DNA of 64,000 bases, from assembly GCA_950097015.1 (NCBI GenBank), contig CATNEN010000039.1, positions 14,446,001 to 14,510,000 on the forward strand, read 5' to 3'. Made by a program: the position numbers and the translations under genes. Positions 16,524 to 26,278 of the stretch are shown here, in pieces. The stretch comes from Macrostomum hystrix (taxonomy: Eukaryota; Animalia; Platyhelminthes). Positions within the stretch are counted from its first letter, which is position 1. Each line of letters begins with the position of its first letter. The notes beneath the pieces were generated by a model that did no database searches, had not been told where the DNA came from, and worked only from the letters and a program-made list of their open reading frames with translations.

Positions 16524-19500
16524 TCATTCCATCGCGTCGTCATCATTGTATTGCCGACTCTCTAGACGATCTCCGTCTGACTCTTCGTTAGCCTCTCTGC
16601 GTCTGCTCTTTCGCTTCGTCAGTCTGTCAGCAAAGTGCCTGCTCAGGTTTGAGTCCAGGTGAGTCAACGGTCGGTCAAGTCTGGCAGCGGTCTCCACCGC
16701 TTGCACTGTGCGCACCTCGTATTTTTCAGCTGCGTAGGCGACTGAGAATGGAGAACCGGAGCTGCCGACACGGCCGATGCGGCCGAGCCGATGCAGGTAC
16801 AGGGCGGGGAAGCCGGGTAGGTCGCAATTGATGATCTGGCTACACGCGCGAGTATCTAGGCCGCGACTAGCCAAGTCGGTGGAAATCAGCATCTGCACAG
16901 GGGGATGCGATGCGACTGGGTGTTAGTAACTGACTCTATCCAAAGAACTAGCTTTTCTAAACTTTTCACAAACTAGTTATTGCTCACGGTCCTCCACCTT
17001 CACACACAAGTATAGACATACACAGAGGACTCACGGTCCTCCACCTTCACACACAGGTATATACATACACAGAGGAATCACGGTCCTCCACCTTCACACA
17101 CAGGTATATACATACACAGAGGACTCACGGTCCTCAACCTTCACACACAGGTATATACATACACAGAGGACTCACGGTCCTCAACCTTCACACACAGGTA
17201 TATATATACACAGAGGACTCACGGTCCTCCACCTTCACACACAGGTATATACATACACAGAGGACTCACGGTCCTCCACCTTCACACACAGGTATATACA
17301 TACACAGAGGACTCACGGTCCTCCACCTTCACACACAGGTATATACATACACAGGGGACTCGCGGTCCTCCACCTTCACACAGATGTATATACATACACA
17401 GGGGACTCACGGTCCTCCACCTTCACACACAGGTATATAAATACACAGGGGACTCAGGTCCTCCACACAATTATACCATGGCTGTACGAATATATATCGT
17501 AATATTTATCCATACGATATCTATAGTAGTAGAAATGAAAGTTAATTAAAGCAATTGGAGGCAGTTAATGCGAAAAGCAATTGAAACTTGCTTCATTGCT
17601 TCTTTTTTCGACCCTTCATGACTGCTTAACGGGATTCTATTTTAGGGGCAGAATAAGTTTTCTTGACTGTATCGGCACCAGGCAGTTGCATAAGACATAG
17701 ACGCCTAAACCTGATTGCAGTGCGTCAAGCGTCATGGTCATGGATGACGAGGAGGATAGTATGACTCGACGCCGCAAGTGGATGCGAAATTACATGCAGA
17801 AACGCGGGCAGTCAGCAAGACGCGGTCATGGCAACGCTAGTCGCGAACGTTCGCCGTTCCGAGCCTTAAATGCAACTGCACCGAGTTGCTCAGTCGCTAG
17901 CGGCTCTGGCAACCGCATCATCGACAGTGACAGTGAGCAGGTCCCCCTCGTCGCCGGCTCGAATGCAGACGATGAGTGCCAGTCACGTTCGGACACACAC
18001 GACGATTCCGCTGGCACCTCCATAGCGTCCCACCACACTGCCGTACAGGTCGACGAAGAGGACGATGTGGAACTCGATGGGGGTAAGCATCGTTGCATCA
18101 ATGCAATTCTAAAACATTTTCACCGACTTCTCAAAGACACCACTGTAGTGTACATTCCTGCTCCACGTCTCCCACATAGGCGACCTCGACGGCGGCTCGA
18201 ATGCAGACGAAGAAGGTGGAGACGAAACTCGTCCACTCGACGCCAGGCTGCTAGAGCAATGGTGCCCGGGACTGCCGCATACTTTAGGCGAAGCGCTTTA
18301 TGAGGTTAACTCGTGCGCGGAGGACCTCCGACTGTCCCGTGAGAAGTTTACGAGACTGCTGAAATGCTGCACCGCCTCGTGCCTAACAACAAGCTGCGCA
18401 GCACTGTGAGCTGCGCGGGATGCAATGAAGTCAGCTCAGTCTTTTTCTGGAAGAACACCTTGCTGGACAGTCTGCAACGATTGTACATTCTGGCATGATG
18501 CTAATCTGGCACGGATTTCTGCGTCCACTGCGGAGGACGCAGCGTTGCAAATTTCTGGCACTTCGACATTCAGATGCAGTTGCAGGCAATGGTAATGTGG
18601 CGTGGAATGCTCGACAACATTGTCTTCCCTGCCGACCGGGACGTGGATCCCGAGATTCTCAGCTTGGGTAGCAGTGATTTATACCAAGACTTCCTGGACA
18701 GCATTGACGCTGAAAGTCACAGCGACATTTCGGCGATAATCTGTTCGGATGGCTTTCCGCTGAAGACGACAAGTGCAGTGGAAGTGTGTCCGTTTTATCT
18801 GTGCTTCGTCGAGGTGCCCGACAGATACAAGTTACGATATGTACTGAAACTGGGAATCTGGGTAGGAGCAAAAAAGGTGCATCCGGAGGCATGTCTGCCT
18901 AAAGATAGTTGATGGACTCAACCATCTGCGCCTCAACGGTATTTCGTACCGTTGAGGTTTCGATGCGATGGTGATATGATGGCCGAGGCGATCGCTGCTG
19001 TCAACCAGCTTGGCAACGATATTAAGCAGAAAAAGCGACTGCGTGAGCCTGCCTCCGGTGTTGGAGATTTGTCCAATAAATATTGCTTATTTATGTAGTC
19101 TGGTGATGTGGCGACACATACTCTTAATCGTATACTCTTAATAGTTTTTTTCCAGTCAGTTTATTTCAATCATAATTTTTCATAATCATAATTTCGGCAG
19201 CTGTATCAGTGCTTTGCTATACCTTATCATATTCTCATTGCTTTGTGCTTTTTCAGTGTTACTTTTAGTATATAACTGAATTATTTCATCGAAATATAAC
19301 TTCAATAACATCAATCCTTTTGTCAAGTTCTCTCCCTCCATTAAATTCACACAGGTGTCGTTCCGTTTTCGCTCATTGCATCAATTTTTATACGCTTAAT
19401 CATCTCAAATCTGAAAATTTCGAACACTTTCTATCGCTTTCTGGACTAATTATCCATAAATCTTTAAATTCAGCTTTTCAGGTTGAAAAAATAAAGTTTC

Positions 19501-22458
19501 GATCGAAATGTTTTCGTCAAATGACTTCGTTAATTGCATTTGATGCTTTTATCTATTTTGTGTTTGATGATGGGTCATGGTCAATCCTGATTGAAAATAA
19601 GTTTTCTTGTTGGTTTTTTTGCTATGAATTTGTTTGCACAATTAAAGTTCTGCACAGTCCTGCTCAAATTGTCTATAGTTAAAATTGATTAAATGTAAAT
19701 TGATTAAAAATGCACGCTGGATTCGCTATATGTACTTGGCAATTGATTATACTGACTTATATTGTAGGACGACTATATAGTATGAAAAATATAAATGATG
19801 TGCCGCTAATTAACTAGACTAGATAGGCTATAGCAACAAAATTCTTAACTGAAACTTCTTGGCCGCACATGTTCAGACTTGAGAGTTACTTGCCGAACTT
19901 GTTAAGTACTTTCCAAGTACTTCTCAAGTTTTAGCACAACGCTTACTAAGCACTTGTTAAGTAGTTACAGTTTCCATTTTGCGGGTATGACAACACTATC
20001 TACCTGAGAATATGACAACACTATCTACCTGAGAATATGACAACACTATCTACCTGAGAATATAAACCTATCTACCTGAGAAAGGGACAACCTTTTCTAC
20101 CTGAGATTATGATTACAACAATATTTACCTAAGATCATGACAACAAAAGCAGCAAGTATGTTTTAACCCACCGGAAGCTGTCCATCAGAGAATGCCTTCA
20201 TCAGGTCGCGCCTACGCGAGACCCGTAGATTGCCGTGCAAAGCGACAGCATCATTAGAATCAACAGCATCGGCCAGCTCCTTGGCTGTGGCCACAGAGTT
20301 GCAGAACACAATAGTAGACAATCTACGTTGGAGATTGCGCCGAATTCGAGCCAAGCAGAGCGCCTGTTTCGTGTCCCGACTGGCTCGGATAAACAGCTGG
20401 GCAGTTTGAGCAGGCGGCCGGTGAGCAAACGGTGTGGCTACTTTGAAAAATGACTCACTGGGCACCAGACCAGGACCAAGGGCTTCGTCTAGGCTTGGCG
20501 GCATGGTGGCTGAGGCTAGCACCACCTGATGGATCGATACGGAACAAGGCGTGAGGTTTTATTAGGGGTGAGATTTGCTTGTTTGGTGTGAGATATGCTT
20601 GTTTGGGGTGAGATATGCTTGCTTGGGGTGAGATATGCTTGCTTGGGGTGAGATATGCTTGTTTGGTGTGAGATATGCTTGCTTGGGGTGAGATATGCTT
20701 GTTTGGTGTGAGATATGCTTGTTTGGTGTGAGATATGCTTGTTTGGGGTGAGATATGCTTGTTTGGTGTGAGATATGCTTGCTTGGGGTGAGATATGCTT
20801 GTTTGGGGTGAGATATGCTTGTTTGGTGTGAGATATGCTTGCTTGGGGTGAGATATGCTTGTTTGGGGTGAGATATGCTTGCTTGGGGGAGGGATACTTG
20901 TTTTGTGAGCGTTTTGTTTGTTTAGAAAGAGCTCAAAAGAGGCAAGATTTACTGTGGAAGAAACTCTCAAATGATTTGCTACTGAGATTCTGTTATCTTA
21001 TCACCGATCTGTTATCTCACCACGTTAACCCAGCCCTAACGAACTCACCTGAGTTCCCAAAGGTATTCCTCCCTGCGGCCGCTCAGTCTGCAGGAACAGG
21101 CGCCTCATCATGCGGCCCAGATCCCGTCTAAAAGAGTCGTCAAGCAGGCAGTCGGCTTCATCCAGTACGCAGGCGGTTGGCATCAGAGGCTGGCCGATAT
21201 CACTTCGCATTCGCAGCAGCTCGTCTAGTCCATTGGGAACGCCGACAATTACAGAGAATGCGGGCGAATCAGCCGGTTGGACATTGGTTAAAGCCGCTGC
21301 CGCCTCGGTTGCCACGCCAACCAGTAGATCCAATCGCGAACAAAGATCCTTAGCAACCGTAGCTATCTGATCAGCCAAATCCATTGTTGGACAGGCGATT
21401 AAAATGCATCTAAGATTGCGTTTTACACCTTCCGGCATTGACAGCAGGTTGCTAAGCAACGGAGCCAGGTAGGCCAGGGTCTTGCCATTGCCGGTCTCGG
21501 CTAAACAGGACGTGTTGCAGCCGGACAACAGTGGACCAGCAGCCATGCACTGGATCAAGGTTGGCCGCTTCGATCTCACACTGGCTGCGGCGGCTGCTGC
21601 CACGCTCGGATGTAAGCCGAGCTGGGCAAAGTCTGAGATTGGAGACTCGATGTTTACCTGGTGGAAGCTGTTGGATCGGCCCTGGAATGACGGTTGGGGT
21701 TTAGGGGCGGATAGGATGGGTTTAGGGGCGGATAGGATGAGTTAAGGGGCGGAAAGGATGGGTTTAGGGGCGGATAGGATGAGTTAAGGGGCGGAGAGAA
21801 TGAGTTAGAGGGCGGAAAGAATGGGTCAAGGGGCGGAAAGGATGGGTCAAGGGGCGGAAAGAATGGGTCAAGGGGCGGAAAGGTTGGGTTTAAGGGCGGA
21901 AAGAATCGGGTCAAGGGGCGGAATGAATGGGTCAAGGGGCGGAAAGGATGGGTTTAGGGGCGGAAAGGATGGGTTTAGGGGCGGAGAGAATGAGTTAGAG
22001 GGCGGAGAGGATGGGTTTAGGGAGACCTGGGAGCCTGGGAGACCACGGATAGTTTGACGAGCGAATATGGATACACTGAAGCTAACCTGAGCCAATATGG
22101 TGAAATAATCGCCCACACTCTTGGAGGCATTGAGCCAGGAGCCGCTAGCCAGCAACTGGTTGCCAAAGCTGGGCGGATAAGCCTGGCCCACAATGCAATT
22201 CTTGCGCTTGTCCTTGGCAACAATCAGCATGCGACTGCGCTGCTTTTCGGACACGTCGCGATGCTTTTCAACAAACTCGGCGTCCCTACGCAGCAGGCCC
22301 TGAGGTAGTAAGATTCGCTCCGGCTCGGGATCCGGCGTAGGGCCGCCCTCAGCTTCCAACAGGACGCGAGCTCTAGCACGACTGTGATAGGCTGAGCACT
22401 GCAGCTGCCGCTGCTGCTGCTGCAGGCGGAACAGCAGGCGATTGATGATTCCAGACTG
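16524..22458 (-). CDS. DDX28: DDX28-like mitochondrial DEAD-box RNA helicase, 4 exons, no genomic initiator ATG
   Basis: Exons 22458-22087, 21681-21049, 20525-20172, 16892-16524, all phase 0 with GT-AG junctions. Q motif (DFAQLGL..PTLIQ), AETGNGKT, DEAD, SAT, TDLASRGLD, HRLGRIGRVG; N-terminal LASGSW...GDYFTI resembles DDX28. Confidence 0.85.
16983..17466. repeat. 47-bp intronic minisatellite, ~10 copies
   Basis: Unit ggactcacggtcctccaccttcacacacaggtatatacatacacaga. Confidence 0.95.
17734..19985 (+). mobile_element. Decayed CACTA/EnSpm DNA transposon inside DDX28 intron 3
   Basis: Frame-broken transposase segment SDGFPLKTTS..VCPFYLCFVEVP...LGIWVGAKK resembles animal EnSpm transposases. Candidate right end tttgcggg at 19985 with subterminal acttgttaagta repeats; left end not seen. 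Confidence 0.7.
19986..20145. repeat. Short degenerate 25-bp tandem repeat
   Basis: Unit tatgacaacactatctacctgagaa, next to the donor at 20171. Confidence 0.8.
20565..20888. repeat. 21-bp intronic minisatellite (DDX28 intron 2)
   Basis: Unit gagatatgcttgtttggggtg. Confidence 0.95.
21696..22022. repeat. 21-bp G-rich intronic minisatellite (DDX28 intron 1)
   Basis: Unit approximately gggcggaaaggatgggtttag. Confidence 0.92.
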
Positions 22459-22474
22459 CTGGAAACAACAGAGG

Positions 22475-23580
22475 GGAAGATTAATCTGAGGATCTGGGAT
22501 AGGGTTATGGGGGAATTAATCTGAGGATCTGGGATAGGATTATGGGGGAATTAATCTGAGGATCTGGGATAGGATTATGGAGGAATTAATCTGAGGATCT
22601 GGGATTAGTTTGTCGGGAAGATTAATCAGAGGATCTGGGATTAGGTTGTCGGGAAGATTAATCAGAGGATCTGGGATTAGTTTGTCGGGAAGCCCTGTAA
22701 AAAATTCGGCTGCTTCTTCGGCGGGTTTTTGTGCAAAATAGGAGTGGAATCTACCAAAATCCCCCCTATCTCGCAAGAGTTAAAGAAACCACCCAGGAAG
22801 CAGCCGATAAAACCGTAAATTGTGCGGAAACCGCCGAAGAATCACCCGAACCAGTGGCCCATGGGACAACCAGATAATTATTTACGGGCGATTCCTCGGC
22901 GGTTTCTGAGCATGGAATCTTCCGAACTGGAGGATTCTTTGGGTGATTCCATTTCGCCACCAAGAATCACCGAGAAAACGCCCAGTTGGGTAGATTCTAA
23001 GCATGGAATCAACCGATTGGTATGTTTCCAGCGTTCGGCTGTTTCTTTTTCTGGAAACACCGCAGATTCCAACTGGAATCACCCAAAGAAACATCCCTAT
23101 TTTTTAGCGGGAGATTAATCTGAGGATCTGGGATTAGGTTGTCGGGAAGATTAATCTGAGAATCTGGGATTAGGTTGTCGGGAAGAATTATTTGAGGATC
23201 TGGGATTAGGTTGTCGGGAAGATTAATCTGAGAATCTGGGATTAGGTTGTCGGGAAGATTAATCTGAGAATCTGGGATTAGGTTGTCGGGAAGATTAATC
23301 TGAGAATCTGGGATTAGGTTGTCGGGAAGATTAATCTGAGAATCTGGGATTAGGTTGTCGGGAAGATTAATCTGAGAATCTGGGATTAGGTTGTCGGGAA
23401 GAATTAATCTGAGGATTTGGGATTAGGTTGTCGGGAAGAATTATTTGAAGATCTGGGATTAGGTTGTCAGGAAGATTAATTTGAGGATCTGGGATAGGAT
23501 TCTGGGGGAGTTAATCTGAGGATCTGGGATAGATTGTAAGGGAGATAAATCTGAGGATCTGGGATGGAATCGTAGGGAGA
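22475..23580. repeat. 36-bp minisatellite in the PPIL4-DDX28 spacer, split by a MITE
   Basis: Unit ggaagattaatctgagaatctgggattaggttgtcg. Confidence 0.93.
22693..23111. mobile_element. Non-autonomous CACTA/EnSpm-like MITE, 419 bp
   Basis: Imperfect TIRs ccctgtaaaaaat / atttttagcggg; 2-bp TSD (ag) restores the interrupted repeat unit; many direct and inverted ggaatc-like subterminal motifs. Confidence 0.8.
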
Positions 23581-23778
23581 TAAAATATTACTAAATCCTA
23601 AAATCTAAGCTAGGACCATAAACTGGAAACTGCCGCAAGCGATTAGGAAATATAATTATATTAACGAATGCACACAGATTATAAATTTACAAATTTAGAT
23701 TAATGACAATGTTTAGTTCGCACATGCAACAGGGAGTACGGTTTCGCGATTGTTTGCTAAATGCCTGAGTTATCATCG

Positions 23779-26278
23779 TTAGTGCTTGTGTGACACTCGC
23801 AGGTCGCTTCTATCGCGAGATTCGCTGCGAGATCTGGAATGAGATCTTCTATTGGACTTCTTTGACATCGGCTTTTGAATGCGTCCTGATTTAGACCGCC
23901 GCTCGGGACTCGGAGACCGTCTGGTCCTCGGTCGCTGCTCGGGACTCGGAGACCGTCTGGTCCTCGGTCGCTGCTCGGGACTCGGAGACCGTCTGGTCCT
24001 CGGTCGCTGCTCGGGACTCGGAGACCGTCTGGTCCTCGGTCGCTGCTCGGGACTCGGAGACCGTCTGGTCCTCGGTCGCTGCTCGGGACTCGGAGACCGT
24101 CTGGTCCTCGGTCGCTGCTCGGGACTCGGAGACCGTCTGGTCCTCGGTCGCTGCTCGGGGACTCGGAGACCGTCTGGTCCTCGGTCGCTGCTCGGGACTC
24201 GGAGACCGTCTGGTCCTCGGTCGCTGCTCGGGACTCGGAGACCGTCTGGTCCTCGGTCGCTGCTCGGGACTCGGAGACCGTCTGGTCCTCGGTCGCTGCT
24301 CGGGACTCGGAGACCGTCTGGTCCTCGGTCGCTGCTCGGGACTCGGAGACCGTCTGGTCCTCGGTCGCTGCTCGGGACTCGGAGATCGCCGCCTTTTGTA
24401 CCCATTACCAGCAGGACTCGGAGACCGCTGTCGTTGCCTCGACTTGCCACCACGAGAAGCAGAAGCCGCTTTGTCTCGCCTAAAATCGCGCCACACCTTG
24501 GCAACAGACTGGCAAAAGTCGACATGAATGCGTCGATCGTCGATGAGCACGTTGTCCATTTTAAAATAGGCAGCTTCGCAATCTTCCGCTCGTTTGAATT
24601 CAATAAATGCGTATTGAAGGGATTCGCCTGCGAATGAGTATACGAGGATCAATATGCGCACCTGTTAAAGACTTCAGCATTTCATTTAACTAGTTCTCCA
24701 TACCTTCGGGTGTTAAACATAGCTCTCTCCCTTGTTCTCCCACCCAGTTCTCTGCCTAATTCTACCATCTACCCGACCTCCAGCGGCTCACCAGTTCGCT
24801 TGCTGCGAATAACCTCGCAGGAATGAATGTCGCCGAATCGACTAAAAATGGTTTCAAGATCCTCGTCTGAAGTAACGGGATTTAACTTGCAGACGAATAG
24901 TACATTGTCCGGTGGCTTAACATCCTCGTCTGGCAGGTCGCCAATCATTGCCAGCAGGCGAGCGTTTGACTCAGCCTCTCGCTGCTGACGATATTCAGCC
25001 GCCTCCTCCTGGGTCAGTCCCTCCGTGTCGTCTATAGCGTCCTCGGCGCCAATGCGATCGGTTCGGGCGAGCTGGTCTATGGAGGGCTCCGGCGACCTGG
25101 TTGGGAAGATTGGCTGATGCTTTTTTGGTTGGTTTGCTCTTGGGTAGGTCAATTAGAGGGTTGGGTAGGTCAATTAGAGGGTTGGGTAGGTCAATTAGAG
25201 GGTTGGATAGGTCAATTAGAGGGTTGGATAGGTCAATTAGAGGGTTGGATAGGTCAATTAGAGGGTTGGATAGGTCAATTAGAGGGTTGGATAGGTCAAT
25301 TAGAGGGTTGGGTAGGTCAATTAGAGGGTTGGATAGGTCAATTAGAGGGTTGGGTAGGTCAATTAGAGGGTTGGATAGGTCAATTAGAGGGTTGGATAGG
25401 TCAATTAGAGGGTTGGATAGGTCAATTAGAGGGTTGGGTAGGTCAATTAGAGGGTTGGATAGGTCAATTAGAGGGTTGGATAGGTCAATTAGAGGGTTGG
25501 GTAGGTCAATTAGAGGGTTGGGTAGGTCAATTAGCGGCTTGGGTAGGTCAATTAGCGGGTTGGGTAGGCCAATTAGCGGCTTGGGTAGGCCAATTAGTGG
25601 GTGGAGTAGGTTTTCTGATTGGTTGGGTAGATTGGTTAGCGGGTTGGGTAGGTTGGTTAGCGGGTTGGGTAGTTCAGTAATTGGCAGTTCCAGTGTGTTA
25701 GTTAGTAGGTGGACAGTGGATCGAGTATGTCGAATTTGAATATAAATAGCAGACCTGTCAGGAATGACGAGTCCAGGTGGATCAGGGAACGGGTCGTCCA
25801 GCACAATGGTGTGGTAGATGCGCACATCCTGATATGGTCGATGATCCCGATCGCAATAGACTTCGTTGAGCTTGTCCAGTGTGTCGAATCCCTCGGCAAC
25901 CTGGCCGAACACGGTGTGCTCGCCGTCTAGGGAGTCCAAGGCGTCGCCAAGAGTGAAAAAGAACTGGGAGCCGTGAGTGCCGGAACCGCTATTGACCATG
26001 CTGATACAGCCGCGTCTAAGGTGCTTCATCTTTGGTCGTAGCTCGCGGTCGAAGAATCTCTCGCCGCAAAGATGGGCGTAGATTGACTCACCGCCTCGCC
26101 CGGTACCGGTAGGGTCGCCTGACTGAGCAACCAGGCCCCGTTGTACTGAATGAAACAGGCACAAATTGTAATACTTAATTTTGCAGAGTTTTAGAAAATT
26201 TTCACTACATTTTGGTCGCTCGCGGCAGTACAAATCCACTGTTAGATCGCCTAGGGATGTCTCGATTAGCACCGACAT
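23779..26278 (-). CDS. PPIL4: PPIL4 cyclophilin-RRM-RS protein, 3 exons, apparent +1 frameshift in the coding repeat
   Basis: Exons 26278-25755, 25096-24792, 24627-23779. Cyclophilin domain ([11 protein letters not shown]...GSQFF), IPDR|SPEP junction, RRM ([12 protein letters not shown]...SLQYAFIEF). An extra G at 24157-24160 moves the as-read stop to 23891. Confidence 0.93.
23902..24385 (-). repeat. Coding 36-bp minisatellite ([12 protein letters not shown], ~13 copies)
   Basis: Nucleotide-identical units inside the last PPIL4 exon, apart from one extra G. Confidence 0.95.
25141..25672. repeat. 21-bp intronic minisatellite (PPIL4 intron 1)
   Basis: Unit gggttggataggtcaattaga. Confidence 0.95.

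What the first reader, a model, noticed from the sequence alone, without database searches (positions are those of the whole stretch)
22380..22480. DDX28 has no start codon; a spliced-leader AUG would supply it and create a mitochondrial presequence
Seen: the DDX28 frame stays open up to a strong acceptor (ctctgttgtttccag, AG at 22460-22459) in phase 0. It reads QSGIINRLLFRLQQQQRQLQCSAYHSRARARVLL, which is Arg-rich and acid-free. The first in-frame Met is about 75 codons later, and upstream lie only a minisatellite, a MITE and the PPIL4 3' end. The tandem CAG-CAG acceptor keeps the frame either way. Established: flatworm spliced leaders end in AUG that can initiate translation, and DDX28 is mitochondrial. 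Inference: trans-splicing is required to make the targeted protein, so RNA processing would gate mitochondrial import.
Basis: partly seen in the sequence, partly recalled or inferred. Interest (0 to 1): 0.88.

Follow-up and report, generated by a model that had tools for sequence, protein, structure and literature searches.

The report
DDX28 start codon from spliced leader
In this Macrostomum flatworm the gene for the mitochondrial-ribosome helicase DDX28 has no usable start codon of its own, and its RNA begins at a splice acceptor behind a short foreign tag, so the AUG that ends the worm's trans-spliced leader most likely starts the protein, a flatworm habit known since 2006.

Summary
On the minus strand a DDX28 orthologue opens in phase 0 right behind a pyrimidine-rich acceptor (AG 22460-22459). 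Its first 34 codons have no acidic residue and six Arg. The first ATG in any frame of exon 1 is codon 77.

RNA contigs from two runs are spliced across intron 1 (GT..AG). They follow the genome only up to 22459 and then carry the same 22 foreign letters. The tool did not print those letters, and the second route to them was closed, so the leader itself was not read.

Other evidence fits a spliced leader (SL). The published M. hystrix SL occurs 27 times in this genome, never on this contig, and ends ...TTGCATG|GT. That ATG is in frame at either of the tandem CAG acceptors. Exon 1 covers the whole DDX28 N-terminal layout, including a conserved motif upstream of Met77. In M. lignano Met77 is Leu, and that gene model is 5'-partial.

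A leader-donated start codon is therefore well supported (about 0.8). The presequence reading rests on composition only. "Gating of import" has no support.

Leader-AUG starts are established in flatworms (Cheng 2006), and this scan has already reported them for other genes of this genome (OTUD6B, SIRT6 and others). This is a new member of a known kind.

The parts
22459..22480 (-). 3' splice acceptor: pyrimidine tract tcttcccctctgttgtttcc plus AG (22460-22459). Proposed trans-splice site for the spliced leader.
   Evidence: Sequence. RNA contigs of runs X3 and X4 follow the genome only up to 22459 and then carry 22 unaligned letters.
22456..22458 (-). First codon CAG, which also forms a tandem second acceptor (AG 22457-22456). 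Use of either AG keeps the frame.
   Evidence: Sequence. The contig alignment reaches 22459, which fits use of the upstream AG with the leader's last G matching the acceptor's G.
22357..22458 (-). 34 codons QSGIINRLLFRLQQQQRQLQCSAYHSRARARVLL: an acid-free, Arg-rich, presequence-like N-terminus.
   Evidence: 0 acidic, 6 Arg, net +6, maximum hydrophobic moment 0.468, which is not above shuffles.
22087..22458 (-). DDX28 exon 1 (124 codons, phase 0 at both ends). It holds the DDX28-specific N-terminal motifs ILLPQ and GDYFTI.
   Evidence: joint; alignment; tblastn with the M. lignano orthologue.
22228..22230 (-). First ATG of exon 1 in any frame (codon 77). The rival start site.
   Evidence: It is Leu in M. 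lignano and lies downstream of the conserved ITxPQ motif.
21682..22086 (-). Intron 1 (405 nt, GT..AG), holding a 21/63-bp minisatellite.
   Evidence: Joint 'skips 405' in contigs of X3 and X4; tandem repeat finder.
21049..21681 (-). Exon 2 (211 codons): Q motif, motif I AETGNGKT, DEAD box.
   Evidence: Pfam DEAD 6.7e-20. Best solved relatives are human DDX28, 4.6e-20 and 1.5e-19, against 1.3e-12 for the next family.
20172..20525 (-). Exon 3 (118 codons; SAT motif and start of Helicase_C). The donor GTGGGT is inferred.
16524..16892 (-). Exon 4 (122 codons plus TGA stop), the rest of Helicase_C.
   Evidence: (Helicase_C 1.7e-11).
22480..22677 (.). 35-bp minisatellite that abuts the acceptor. No RNA contig lies on it.
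   Evidence: zero depth over 22462-22677.
22693..23105 (.). Young dispersed non-coding repeat of about 413 bp, inserted into the minisatellite.
   Evidence: At least 262 candidate copies; the 40 scored are 97-98% identical with the same ends. High-depth RNA contigs on it come from other copies.
23779..24661 (-). Last coding part of the upstream same-strand neighbour PPIL4 (end of the RRM plus an RS-repeat tail).

Best explanation
This is the single-copy DDX28 orthologue of a Macrostomum flatworm (M. hystrix according to the scan's notes, and its genome carries the published leader exactly). Its pre-mRNA is trans-spliced at the acceptor AG 22460-22459 to the 45-nt spliced leader, which ends in AUG. 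That AUG is the first AUG of the mature mRNA and is in frame, so it starts translation. The result is Met plus 575 genome-encoded residues. The first ~35 residues are acid-free and Arg-rich, like the presequences of DDX28 in other animals.

Shown: the exon 1 boundary at the acceptor in RNA; a foreign 22-letter 5' tag; the leader gene ending ATG|GT; the frame; the absence of any genomic ATG; and the conserved N-terminal layout.

Inferred: that the tag is the leader; that ribosomes start at its AUG; and that the N-terminus directs import into mitochondria.
For: (1). In runs X3 and X4 one contig each (1965 and 1982 nt) is spliced over intron 1 (skips 405, GT..AG) and aligns up to 22459, with letters 1-22 unaligned. 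The 5' overhang is identical in both runs although the 3' ends differ. No contig lies on 22462-22677, and no joint to any upstream exon within 22460-23100 was listed.
(2) The alignment end at 22459 is what SL...ATG|CAG predicts: the leader's G matches the acceptor's G, and its T then mismatches.
(3) An overhang of 23 leader letters fits a 31-letter-word graph that branches where another trans-spliced mRNA shares the first 7 exon letters. With 7,254 trans-spliced genes the chance of sharing exactly 7 letters is about 0.25. For a two-way cis branch it is about 6e-5.
(4). The published M. hystrix leader occurs 27 times exactly in this genome, none on the window's contig, and the gene reads ...TTGCATG|GTAAG. 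There is no leader-like sequence in the window.
(5). There is no ATG between the upstream stop and codon 77 in any frame.
(6). Exon 1 aligns with the complete N-terminal part of DDX28 from arthropods, a brachiopod, a leech and a bird. The ITxPQ motif sits at codons 49-53, and the orthologues' Met lies within a few residues of the acceptor.
(7). The M. lignano orthologue PAA58288.1 is annotated partial, its frame is open to its first residue, and it has Leu at the Met77 position.
(8). The literature shows leader-AUG initiation in flatworms.
Against: Their identity with the leader is therefore inferred. The leader AUG has a weak context by the vertebrate rule (T at -3, C at +4), so leaky scanning is possible. 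The hydrophobic moment of the N-terminus (0.468) is not above shuffles (38% reach it). M. lignano has an in-frame Met at residue 12 of its partial model, so dependence on the leader AUG may not hold in that species. Contigs cannot show rare isoforms.
Confidence: 0.8

Rival explanations
1. A short cis 5' exon, not the spliced leader, is joined to the acceptor and supplies the start codon or a 5' UTR. It would lie in the PPIL4 3' region or further upstream, for example as a PPIL4-DDX28 read-through or fusion transcript.
For: The 22 tag letters were not read. On the minus strand, ATGs at 23776, 23725 and 23619 have in-phase GT donors, and they lie outside the stretch laid. An old M. lignano model (P0002, A0A1I8JLN5) fuses PPIL4-like and DDX28 parts.
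Against: The 22-letter overhang is identical in two runs whose contig 3' ends differ. A two-way cis branch should leave about 30 letters, not 22-23. A contig running into an expressed PPIL4 exon should extend much further. No joint was listed within 22460-23100. Such an exon would lengthen the N-terminus beyond that of the orthologues. P0002 is a frameshifted prediction, and the newer model P0081 is separate and 5'-partial.
Confidence: 0.1
2. The part of exon 1 upstream of codon 77 is 5' UTR, and translation starts at Met77 or at a non-AUG codon in exon 1. The leader AUG is then skipped, or makes only a minor product.
For: The leader AUG has a weak context (T at -3, C at +4). No other AUG lies between it and Met77, so leaky scanning would reach Met77.
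Against: Codons 39-76 are conserved as protein with M. lignano (76% identity over the tblastn match covering codons 29-124 of exon 1). They contain the family-wide ITxPQ motif. Met77 is Leu in M. lignano, where the next Met lies behind motif I. A Met77 product has Asp at position 7 and no presequence-like start.
Confidence: 0.05
3. Trans-splicing here serves mainly to cut DDX28 out of a PPIL4-DDX28 polycistronic transcript. The in-frame AUG is a by-product that the gene has come to depend on.
For: PPIL4 lies 1.3 kb upstream on the same strand. The adjacency is kept in M. lignano, where a predictor fused the two genes. Most of the spacer is a minisatellite plus a young repeat insertion. This does not exclude the best explanation.
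Against: No RNA contig covers 22462-22677. The 1.3-kb spacing exceeds the 300-bp-or-less operon criterion used for flatworms in PMC12582326. The PPIL4 3' end was not mapped.
Confidence: 0.3

Closest known systems
[quoted passage not shown]
   Same: The leader ends in AUG, is joined in frame to an ORF that lacks its own start, and the N-terminus matches the orthologues only if the leader AUG is used. In S. mansoni 28% of trans-spliced mRNAs are in frame and more than 40 cDNAs need the leader AUG. In E. granulosus the same holds, and the usage is conserved in Neodermata. The in-frame cases there include mitochondrial proteins, a NADH-ubiquinone oxidoreductase subunit and COX6B.
   Different: This is a free-living macrostomorph, not a parasite. 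The gene is DDX28. No survey of leader-AUG-dependent genes in Macrostomum turned up in the papers searched. The genome paper only remarks that the ATG is probably a start codon.
Echinococcus granulosus thioredoxin glutathione reductase: trans-spliced mRNA variants for mitochondrial and cytosolic forms (Agorio et al. 2003, cited in PMC2873472)
   Same: A flatworm gene in which trans-spliced mRNAs decide whether a mitochondrial leader peptide is made.
   Different: There, two variants arise from alternative transcription starts and both carry the leader. Here only one form is seen and no cytosolic isoform is evident.
Trypanosoma brucei isoleucyl-tRNA synthetase: dual targeting by alternative trans-splicing (PMC3273800)
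   Same: The choice of trans-splice site decides whether a mitochondrial presequence is encoded (title seen).
   Different: In trypanosomes the start codons are genomic, and the leader donates no AUG. Here the tandem acceptors differ by a single Gln codon and do not change targeting.
Human DDX28 (PDB 7OI6 chain x, 9HCC chain z, 9UU7)
   Same: Best solved relative of exon 2. The helicase core starts near residue 126 in human and near residue 140 here. The N-terminal layout is shared.
   Different: Human DDX28 has its own genomic start codon (the author's knowledge, not tested here).

Membership tests
DDX28 subfamily of DEAD-box helicases | DEAD and Helicase_C domains with motifs Q, I (AETGxGKT), II (DEAD) and III (SAT) | tested here: met
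   Pfam DEAD 6.7e-20 and Helicase_C 1.7e-11. AETGNGKT, DEAD and SAT are read.
DDX28 subfamily of DEAD-box helicases | Closest to DDX28 and not to other DEAD-box families | tested here: met
   Exon 2 against PDB: DDX28 4.6e-20 to 8e-18, next family (vasa) 1.3e-12. With the M. lignano orthologue as query, nearly every hit that carries a specific name is called DDX28.
DDX28 subfamily of DEAD-box helicases | Family-specific N-terminal motifs (ITxPQ; KR-rich block; GWxxxKSxGDYFTI) ahead of the core | tested here: met
   Alignment of exon 1 with eight orthologue N-termini.
DDX28 subfamily of DEAD-box helicases | Location in mitochondria and a role in assembly of the large mitoribosomal subunit | not testable with these tools
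   Known for human DDX28; inferred here by orthology.
Trans-spliced mRNA that starts at the leader's AUG | The genome has SL RNA genes whose exon ends in AUG, followed by a GT donor | tested here: met
   27 exact copies; the gene reads ...TTGCATG|GTAAG; the leader sequence is from PMC10468722 Table S3.
Trans-spliced mRNA that starts at the leader's AUG | The mature mRNA carries the leader joined at a 3' splice acceptor | tested here: inconclusive
   Contigs of two runs stop following the genome at 22459 and carry 22 foreign letters.
Trans-spliced mRNA that starts at the leader's AUG | The leader AUG is in frame with the main ORF, with no stop between | tested here: met
   The acceptor is in phase 0: ATG|CAG TCT.... 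The second AG also keeps the frame.
Trans-spliced mRNA that starts at the leader's AUG | No genomic AUG can give the conserved N-terminus | tested here: met
   No ATG in any frame before codon 77. The conserved motif lies upstream of codon 77. Met77 is Leu in M. lignano.
Trans-spliced mRNA that starts at the leader's AUG | Ribosomes initiate at the leader AUG | not testable with these tools
   Needs ribosome profiling, N-terminomics or a reporter.
Mitochondrial matrix-targeting presequence | N-terminal 20-40 residues without acidic residues, rich in Arg, Leu, Ala and Ser | tested here: met
   0 Asp/Glu, 6 Arg and 9 Ala/Leu in the first 35 residues. Such windows make up 0.2% of internal windows of the homologues.
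Mitochondrial matrix-targeting presequence | Amphipathic helix | tested here: inconclusive
   The best 18-residue hydrophobic moment is 0.468, against a shuffle mean of 0.438 (sd 0.12); 38% of shuffles reach it.
Mitochondrial matrix-targeting presequence | Called by a trained predictor, or shown by import and cleavage | not tested
   No TargetP or MitoFates was on hand. An Arg at -2/-3 before Leu/Glu (RARARVLL|EA) is only a visual lead.
Flatworm operon resolved by the spliced leader | Same-strand upstream gene at 300 bp or less (criterion of PMC12582326) and a trans-spliced downstream gene | tested here: not met
   The spacing from the PPIL4 stop to the acceptor is about 1.3 kb. Adjacency is conserved in M. 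lignano. No RNA bridging the two genes was seen.

The most novel reading that the evidence does not exclude
The weak context of the leader AUG lets some ribosomes scan on to Met77 (no other AUG lies between). One trans-spliced mRNA would then make a mitochondrial DDX28 and a shorter non-mitochondrial one, or changes in trans-splicing efficiency would tune how much helicase reaches mitochondria. That would be a real 'gate' on import set by RNA processing.
Probability: 0.05. Interest if true: 0.6.

Novelty: new member of a known kind. Interest (0 to 1): 0.25.

Why it matters
For annotation, genes like this one are called 'partial', are fused to a neighbour, or are given a false downstream Met. 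All three have happened to the Macrostomum DDX28 models. Adding the leader's AUG at mapped trans-splice sites would repair the N-termini, and with them the targeting predictions, of many flatworm proteins.

For biology, this extends leader-AUG dependence from parasitic flatworms to an early-branching free-living lineage, and to a protein whose location depends on its first residues. The principle itself is twenty years old.

Tried and rejected
(1) Reading the tag letters. Read laying (one call allowed) listed the contig pieces, but its loose-end table was truncated ('18 more are not shown') and left out the end at 22459.
(2) Reaching the same contigs through proteins. The search for homologous proteins with exon 1 found nothing in its length range.
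(3) Runs X1 and X2 (other organisms) covered only a small part of exon 2 and the dispersed repeat, so they gave no cross-species junction.
(4) The supplements of the two Macrostomum trans-splicing papers hold no DDX28 or PPIL4 entry.
(5) The S. mansoni phytochelatin synthase paper looked like a precedent linking a leader AUG to mitochondrial targeting, but that mRNA is not trans-spliced.
(6) The bacterial promoter and terminator scan on the spacer is meaningless for this organism.
(7) 'MITE': no long terminal inverted repeats were found, so the element is reported only as a young dispersed repeat.
(8) Hydrophobic moment as support for an amphipathic helix: not above shuffles.
Only in local scripts was the exon 1 translation set in front of the first 60 residues of exon 2 for a display alignment, and given a leading Met for residue counts.
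Full report
**What is in the sequence**

The minus strand reads tcttcccctctgttgtttccag|CAG TCT GGA ATC ..., with the AG at 22460-22459. The frame behind it translates to QSGIINRLLFRLQQQQRQLQCSAYHSRARARVLLEAEGG... and stays open for 124 codons, up to a GT donor at 22086.

Upstream, the frame stays open for only 19 more codons, then meets a stop, and holds no ATG in that stretch. Exon 1 has no ATG in any frame before codon 77, at 22230-22228. A second AG (CAG|CAG) keeps the frame.

One label is not verified. The upstream element it calls a MITE is a young dispersed repeat of about 413 bp at 22693-23105. It has at least 262 candidate copies, and the 40 scored are 97-98% identical. I found no long terminal inverted repeats in it.

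**What the gene is**

The gene model has four exons:
- Exon 1: 22458-22087.
- Exon 2: 21681-21049. It carries a DEAD domain (6.7e-20).
- Exon 3: 20525-20172.
- Exon 4: 16892-16524. Exons 3 and 4 together carry Helicase_C.

The exon borders follow the RNA joint for intron 1 and tblastn with the M. lignano orthologue for the rest.

Exon 2's best solved relatives are three human DDX28 sequences (4.6e-20 to 8e-18). The next family, vasa, scores 1.3e-12. With the M. lignano orthologue as query, nearly all hits that carry a specific name are called DDX28. The gene is single-copy in this genome.

Database searches were made exon by exon, by reference.

**Organism and leader**

Earlier notes of this scan name the genome Macrostomum hystrix. 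The published M. hystrix spliced leader (SL) is CGTAAAGACGGTCTCTTACTGCGAAGACTCAATTTATTGCATG (PMC10468722, Table S3). Its last 29 letters occur 27 times exactly in this genome, partly in arrays with a period of about 11.6 kb, and never on the window's contig. One copy reads GCCGTAAAGACGG...TTGCATG|GTAAGAC, which is an exon ending in ATG followed by a donor. The window itself holds nothing like it, even allowing three mismatches.

**RNA evidence**

Four runs were laid on 20950-23100. Runs X3 and X4 are of unrecorded kind, but each holds one contig, of 1965 and 1982 nt, that skips 405 bases with GT..AG ends exactly at intron 1. They are therefore RNA.

In both contigs, letters 23-396 lie on 22086-22459 and letters 397-1031 lie on 21046-21680. 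Letters 1-22 lie on nothing. No contig covers 22462-22677, and no joint to an upstream exon within the stretch was listed.

The tool did not print the tag, because its loose-end table was truncated.

Three points argue that the tag is the leader:
- **Alignment end.** The alignment stops at 22459, not 22458. This is what ...ATG|CAG predicts: the leader's G matches the acceptor's G, and its T then mismatches.
- **Constant overhang.** The overhang is the same in both runs although the contigs' 3' ends differ. That points to a branch in the assembly graph and not to a drop in coverage.
- **Overhang length.** With 31-letter words, 23 leader letters mean that another trans-spliced mRNA shares the first seven exon letters. 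With 7,254 trans-spliced genes this has a chance of about 0.25. A two-way cis branch would leave about 30 letters.

The third point is my inference and assumes k = 31 for these contigs.

**Comparative evidence**

Exon 1 aligns with the entire pre-helicase part of DDX28 from ticks, shrimps, a brachiopod, a leech and a bird. Three features stand out:
- The block LIVAKDKRKN...LASGSWLNASKSVGDYFTI matches xIIxCKRxEFN...LASxGWKHxKSxGDYFTI.
- ILLPQGLL (codons 49-56) matches the family's ITVPQ motif.
- The orthologues' initiator Met lies within a few columns of the acceptor.

Met77 sits downstream of the ITxPQ motif. It is Leu in M. lignano, where the next Met lies behind motif I.

The newer M. lignano model (PAA58288.1) is annotated partial and is open to its first residue: CRLLHPQPPPRMPPSRLYRSRVLTEAEGG. 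That stretch is again acid-free and Arg-rich, but it is barely alignable with M. hystrix, as presequences usually are. It does contain an in-frame Met at residue 12, so strict dependence on the leader AUG may be specific to M. hystrix.

**Presequence**

A product starting with Met has, in its first 35 residues, no acidic residue, six Arg and net charge +6. Its first acidic residue is at position 36. A Met77 product has Asp at position 7. Among internal 35-residue windows of DDX28 homologues, only 70 of 36,577 are acid-free with six or more Lys/Arg.

The best helical hydrophobic moment (0.468) is not above shuffles. No trained predictor was available. The presequence reading is therefore plausible by composition and orthology, but not demonstrated.

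**How it most likely works**

1. The pre-mRNA is made either from its own promoter or as a PPIL4 read-through.
2. It is trans-spliced at AG 22460-22459.
3. The 42-nt leader then serves as the 5' UTR, and its AUG starts a 576-residue protein.
4. The first ~35 residues direct the protein to mitochondria.

Steps 1 and 4 are inferred. Step 2 is strongly indicated. Step 3 follows from the lack of any alternative that keeps the conserved N-terminus. Nothing suggests that trans-splicing is regulated here, so 'gating' is not supported.

**What is known already**

All flatworm leaders end in AUG. In S. mansoni the AUG is in frame in 28% of trans-spliced mRNAs, and more than 40 cDNAs need it (Cheng et al. 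2006, as cited in PMC9851317). In E. granulosus, several mRNAs need the leader AUG to match their orthologues. The usage is conserved in Neodermata, and mitochondrial proteins are among the in-frame cases (PMC3510090). Trans-spliced variants encode the mitochondrial and cytosolic forms of E. granulosus TGR.

The M. hystrix genome paper itself notes that the leader's ATG is probably a start codon. This scan has already reported the same pattern for OTUD6B, SIRT6 and other genes of this genome. Those are unchecked notes.

**Verdict**

The leader-donated start codon is well supported (0.8), although the leader letters were not read. The presequence is plausible. Gating is unsupported. This is a new member of a known kind.

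Noticed in passing
window 23897-24385 (minus strand, PPIL4 last exon): The RS tail of PPIL4 is encoded by a near-perfect 36-bp x 13 array (unit peptide [12 protein letters not shown]). One unit, starting at 24193, is 37 bp long because of an extra C in a C run. From there the RS frame jumps to another ORF. As assembled, the RRM-bearing frame runs into [12 protein letters not shown] repeats and stops at 23891, while the RS frame continues to 23779. This is either a homopolymer error in the assembly or a real frameshift.
   Followed up: partly
window 22480-23565: The PPIL4-DDX28 spacer is mostly one minisatellite (35/36-bp units with a shared core ATTAATCTGAGGATCTGGGAT). It is split by a very young dispersed repeat of about 413 bp (at least 262 candidate copies, 97-98% identical). 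Without these two, the spacer would be only a few hundred bases long.
   Followed up: partly
P0002 (M. lignano A0A1I8JLN5) and window 16524-26278: PPIL4 and DDX28 are adjacent on the same strand in M. lignano as well. There an old gene model fuses a PPIL4-like part to a frameshifted DDX28 part.
   Followed up: partly
window 20565-20903, 21697-22022, 25140-25676: DDX28 introns 1 and 2 and a PPIL4 intron each carry their own 20-21-bp minisatellite (about 15.5 to 26 copies). One of them reads through as a long false ORF (NPLIDLS repeats) in the ORF list.
   Followed up: no
window 16893-20171: DDX28 intron 3 is 3.3 kb long. It holds plus-strand ORFs of 189 and 112 aa (17734-18303 and 18574-18912) that have no Pfam match.
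   Followed up: partly
G000 contigs C15, C17, C42 (L006 and others): Exact leader copies recur about every 11.6 kb in long arrays. This fits the scan's earlier notes that the SL RNA gene sits in the rDNA repeat.
   Followed up: no
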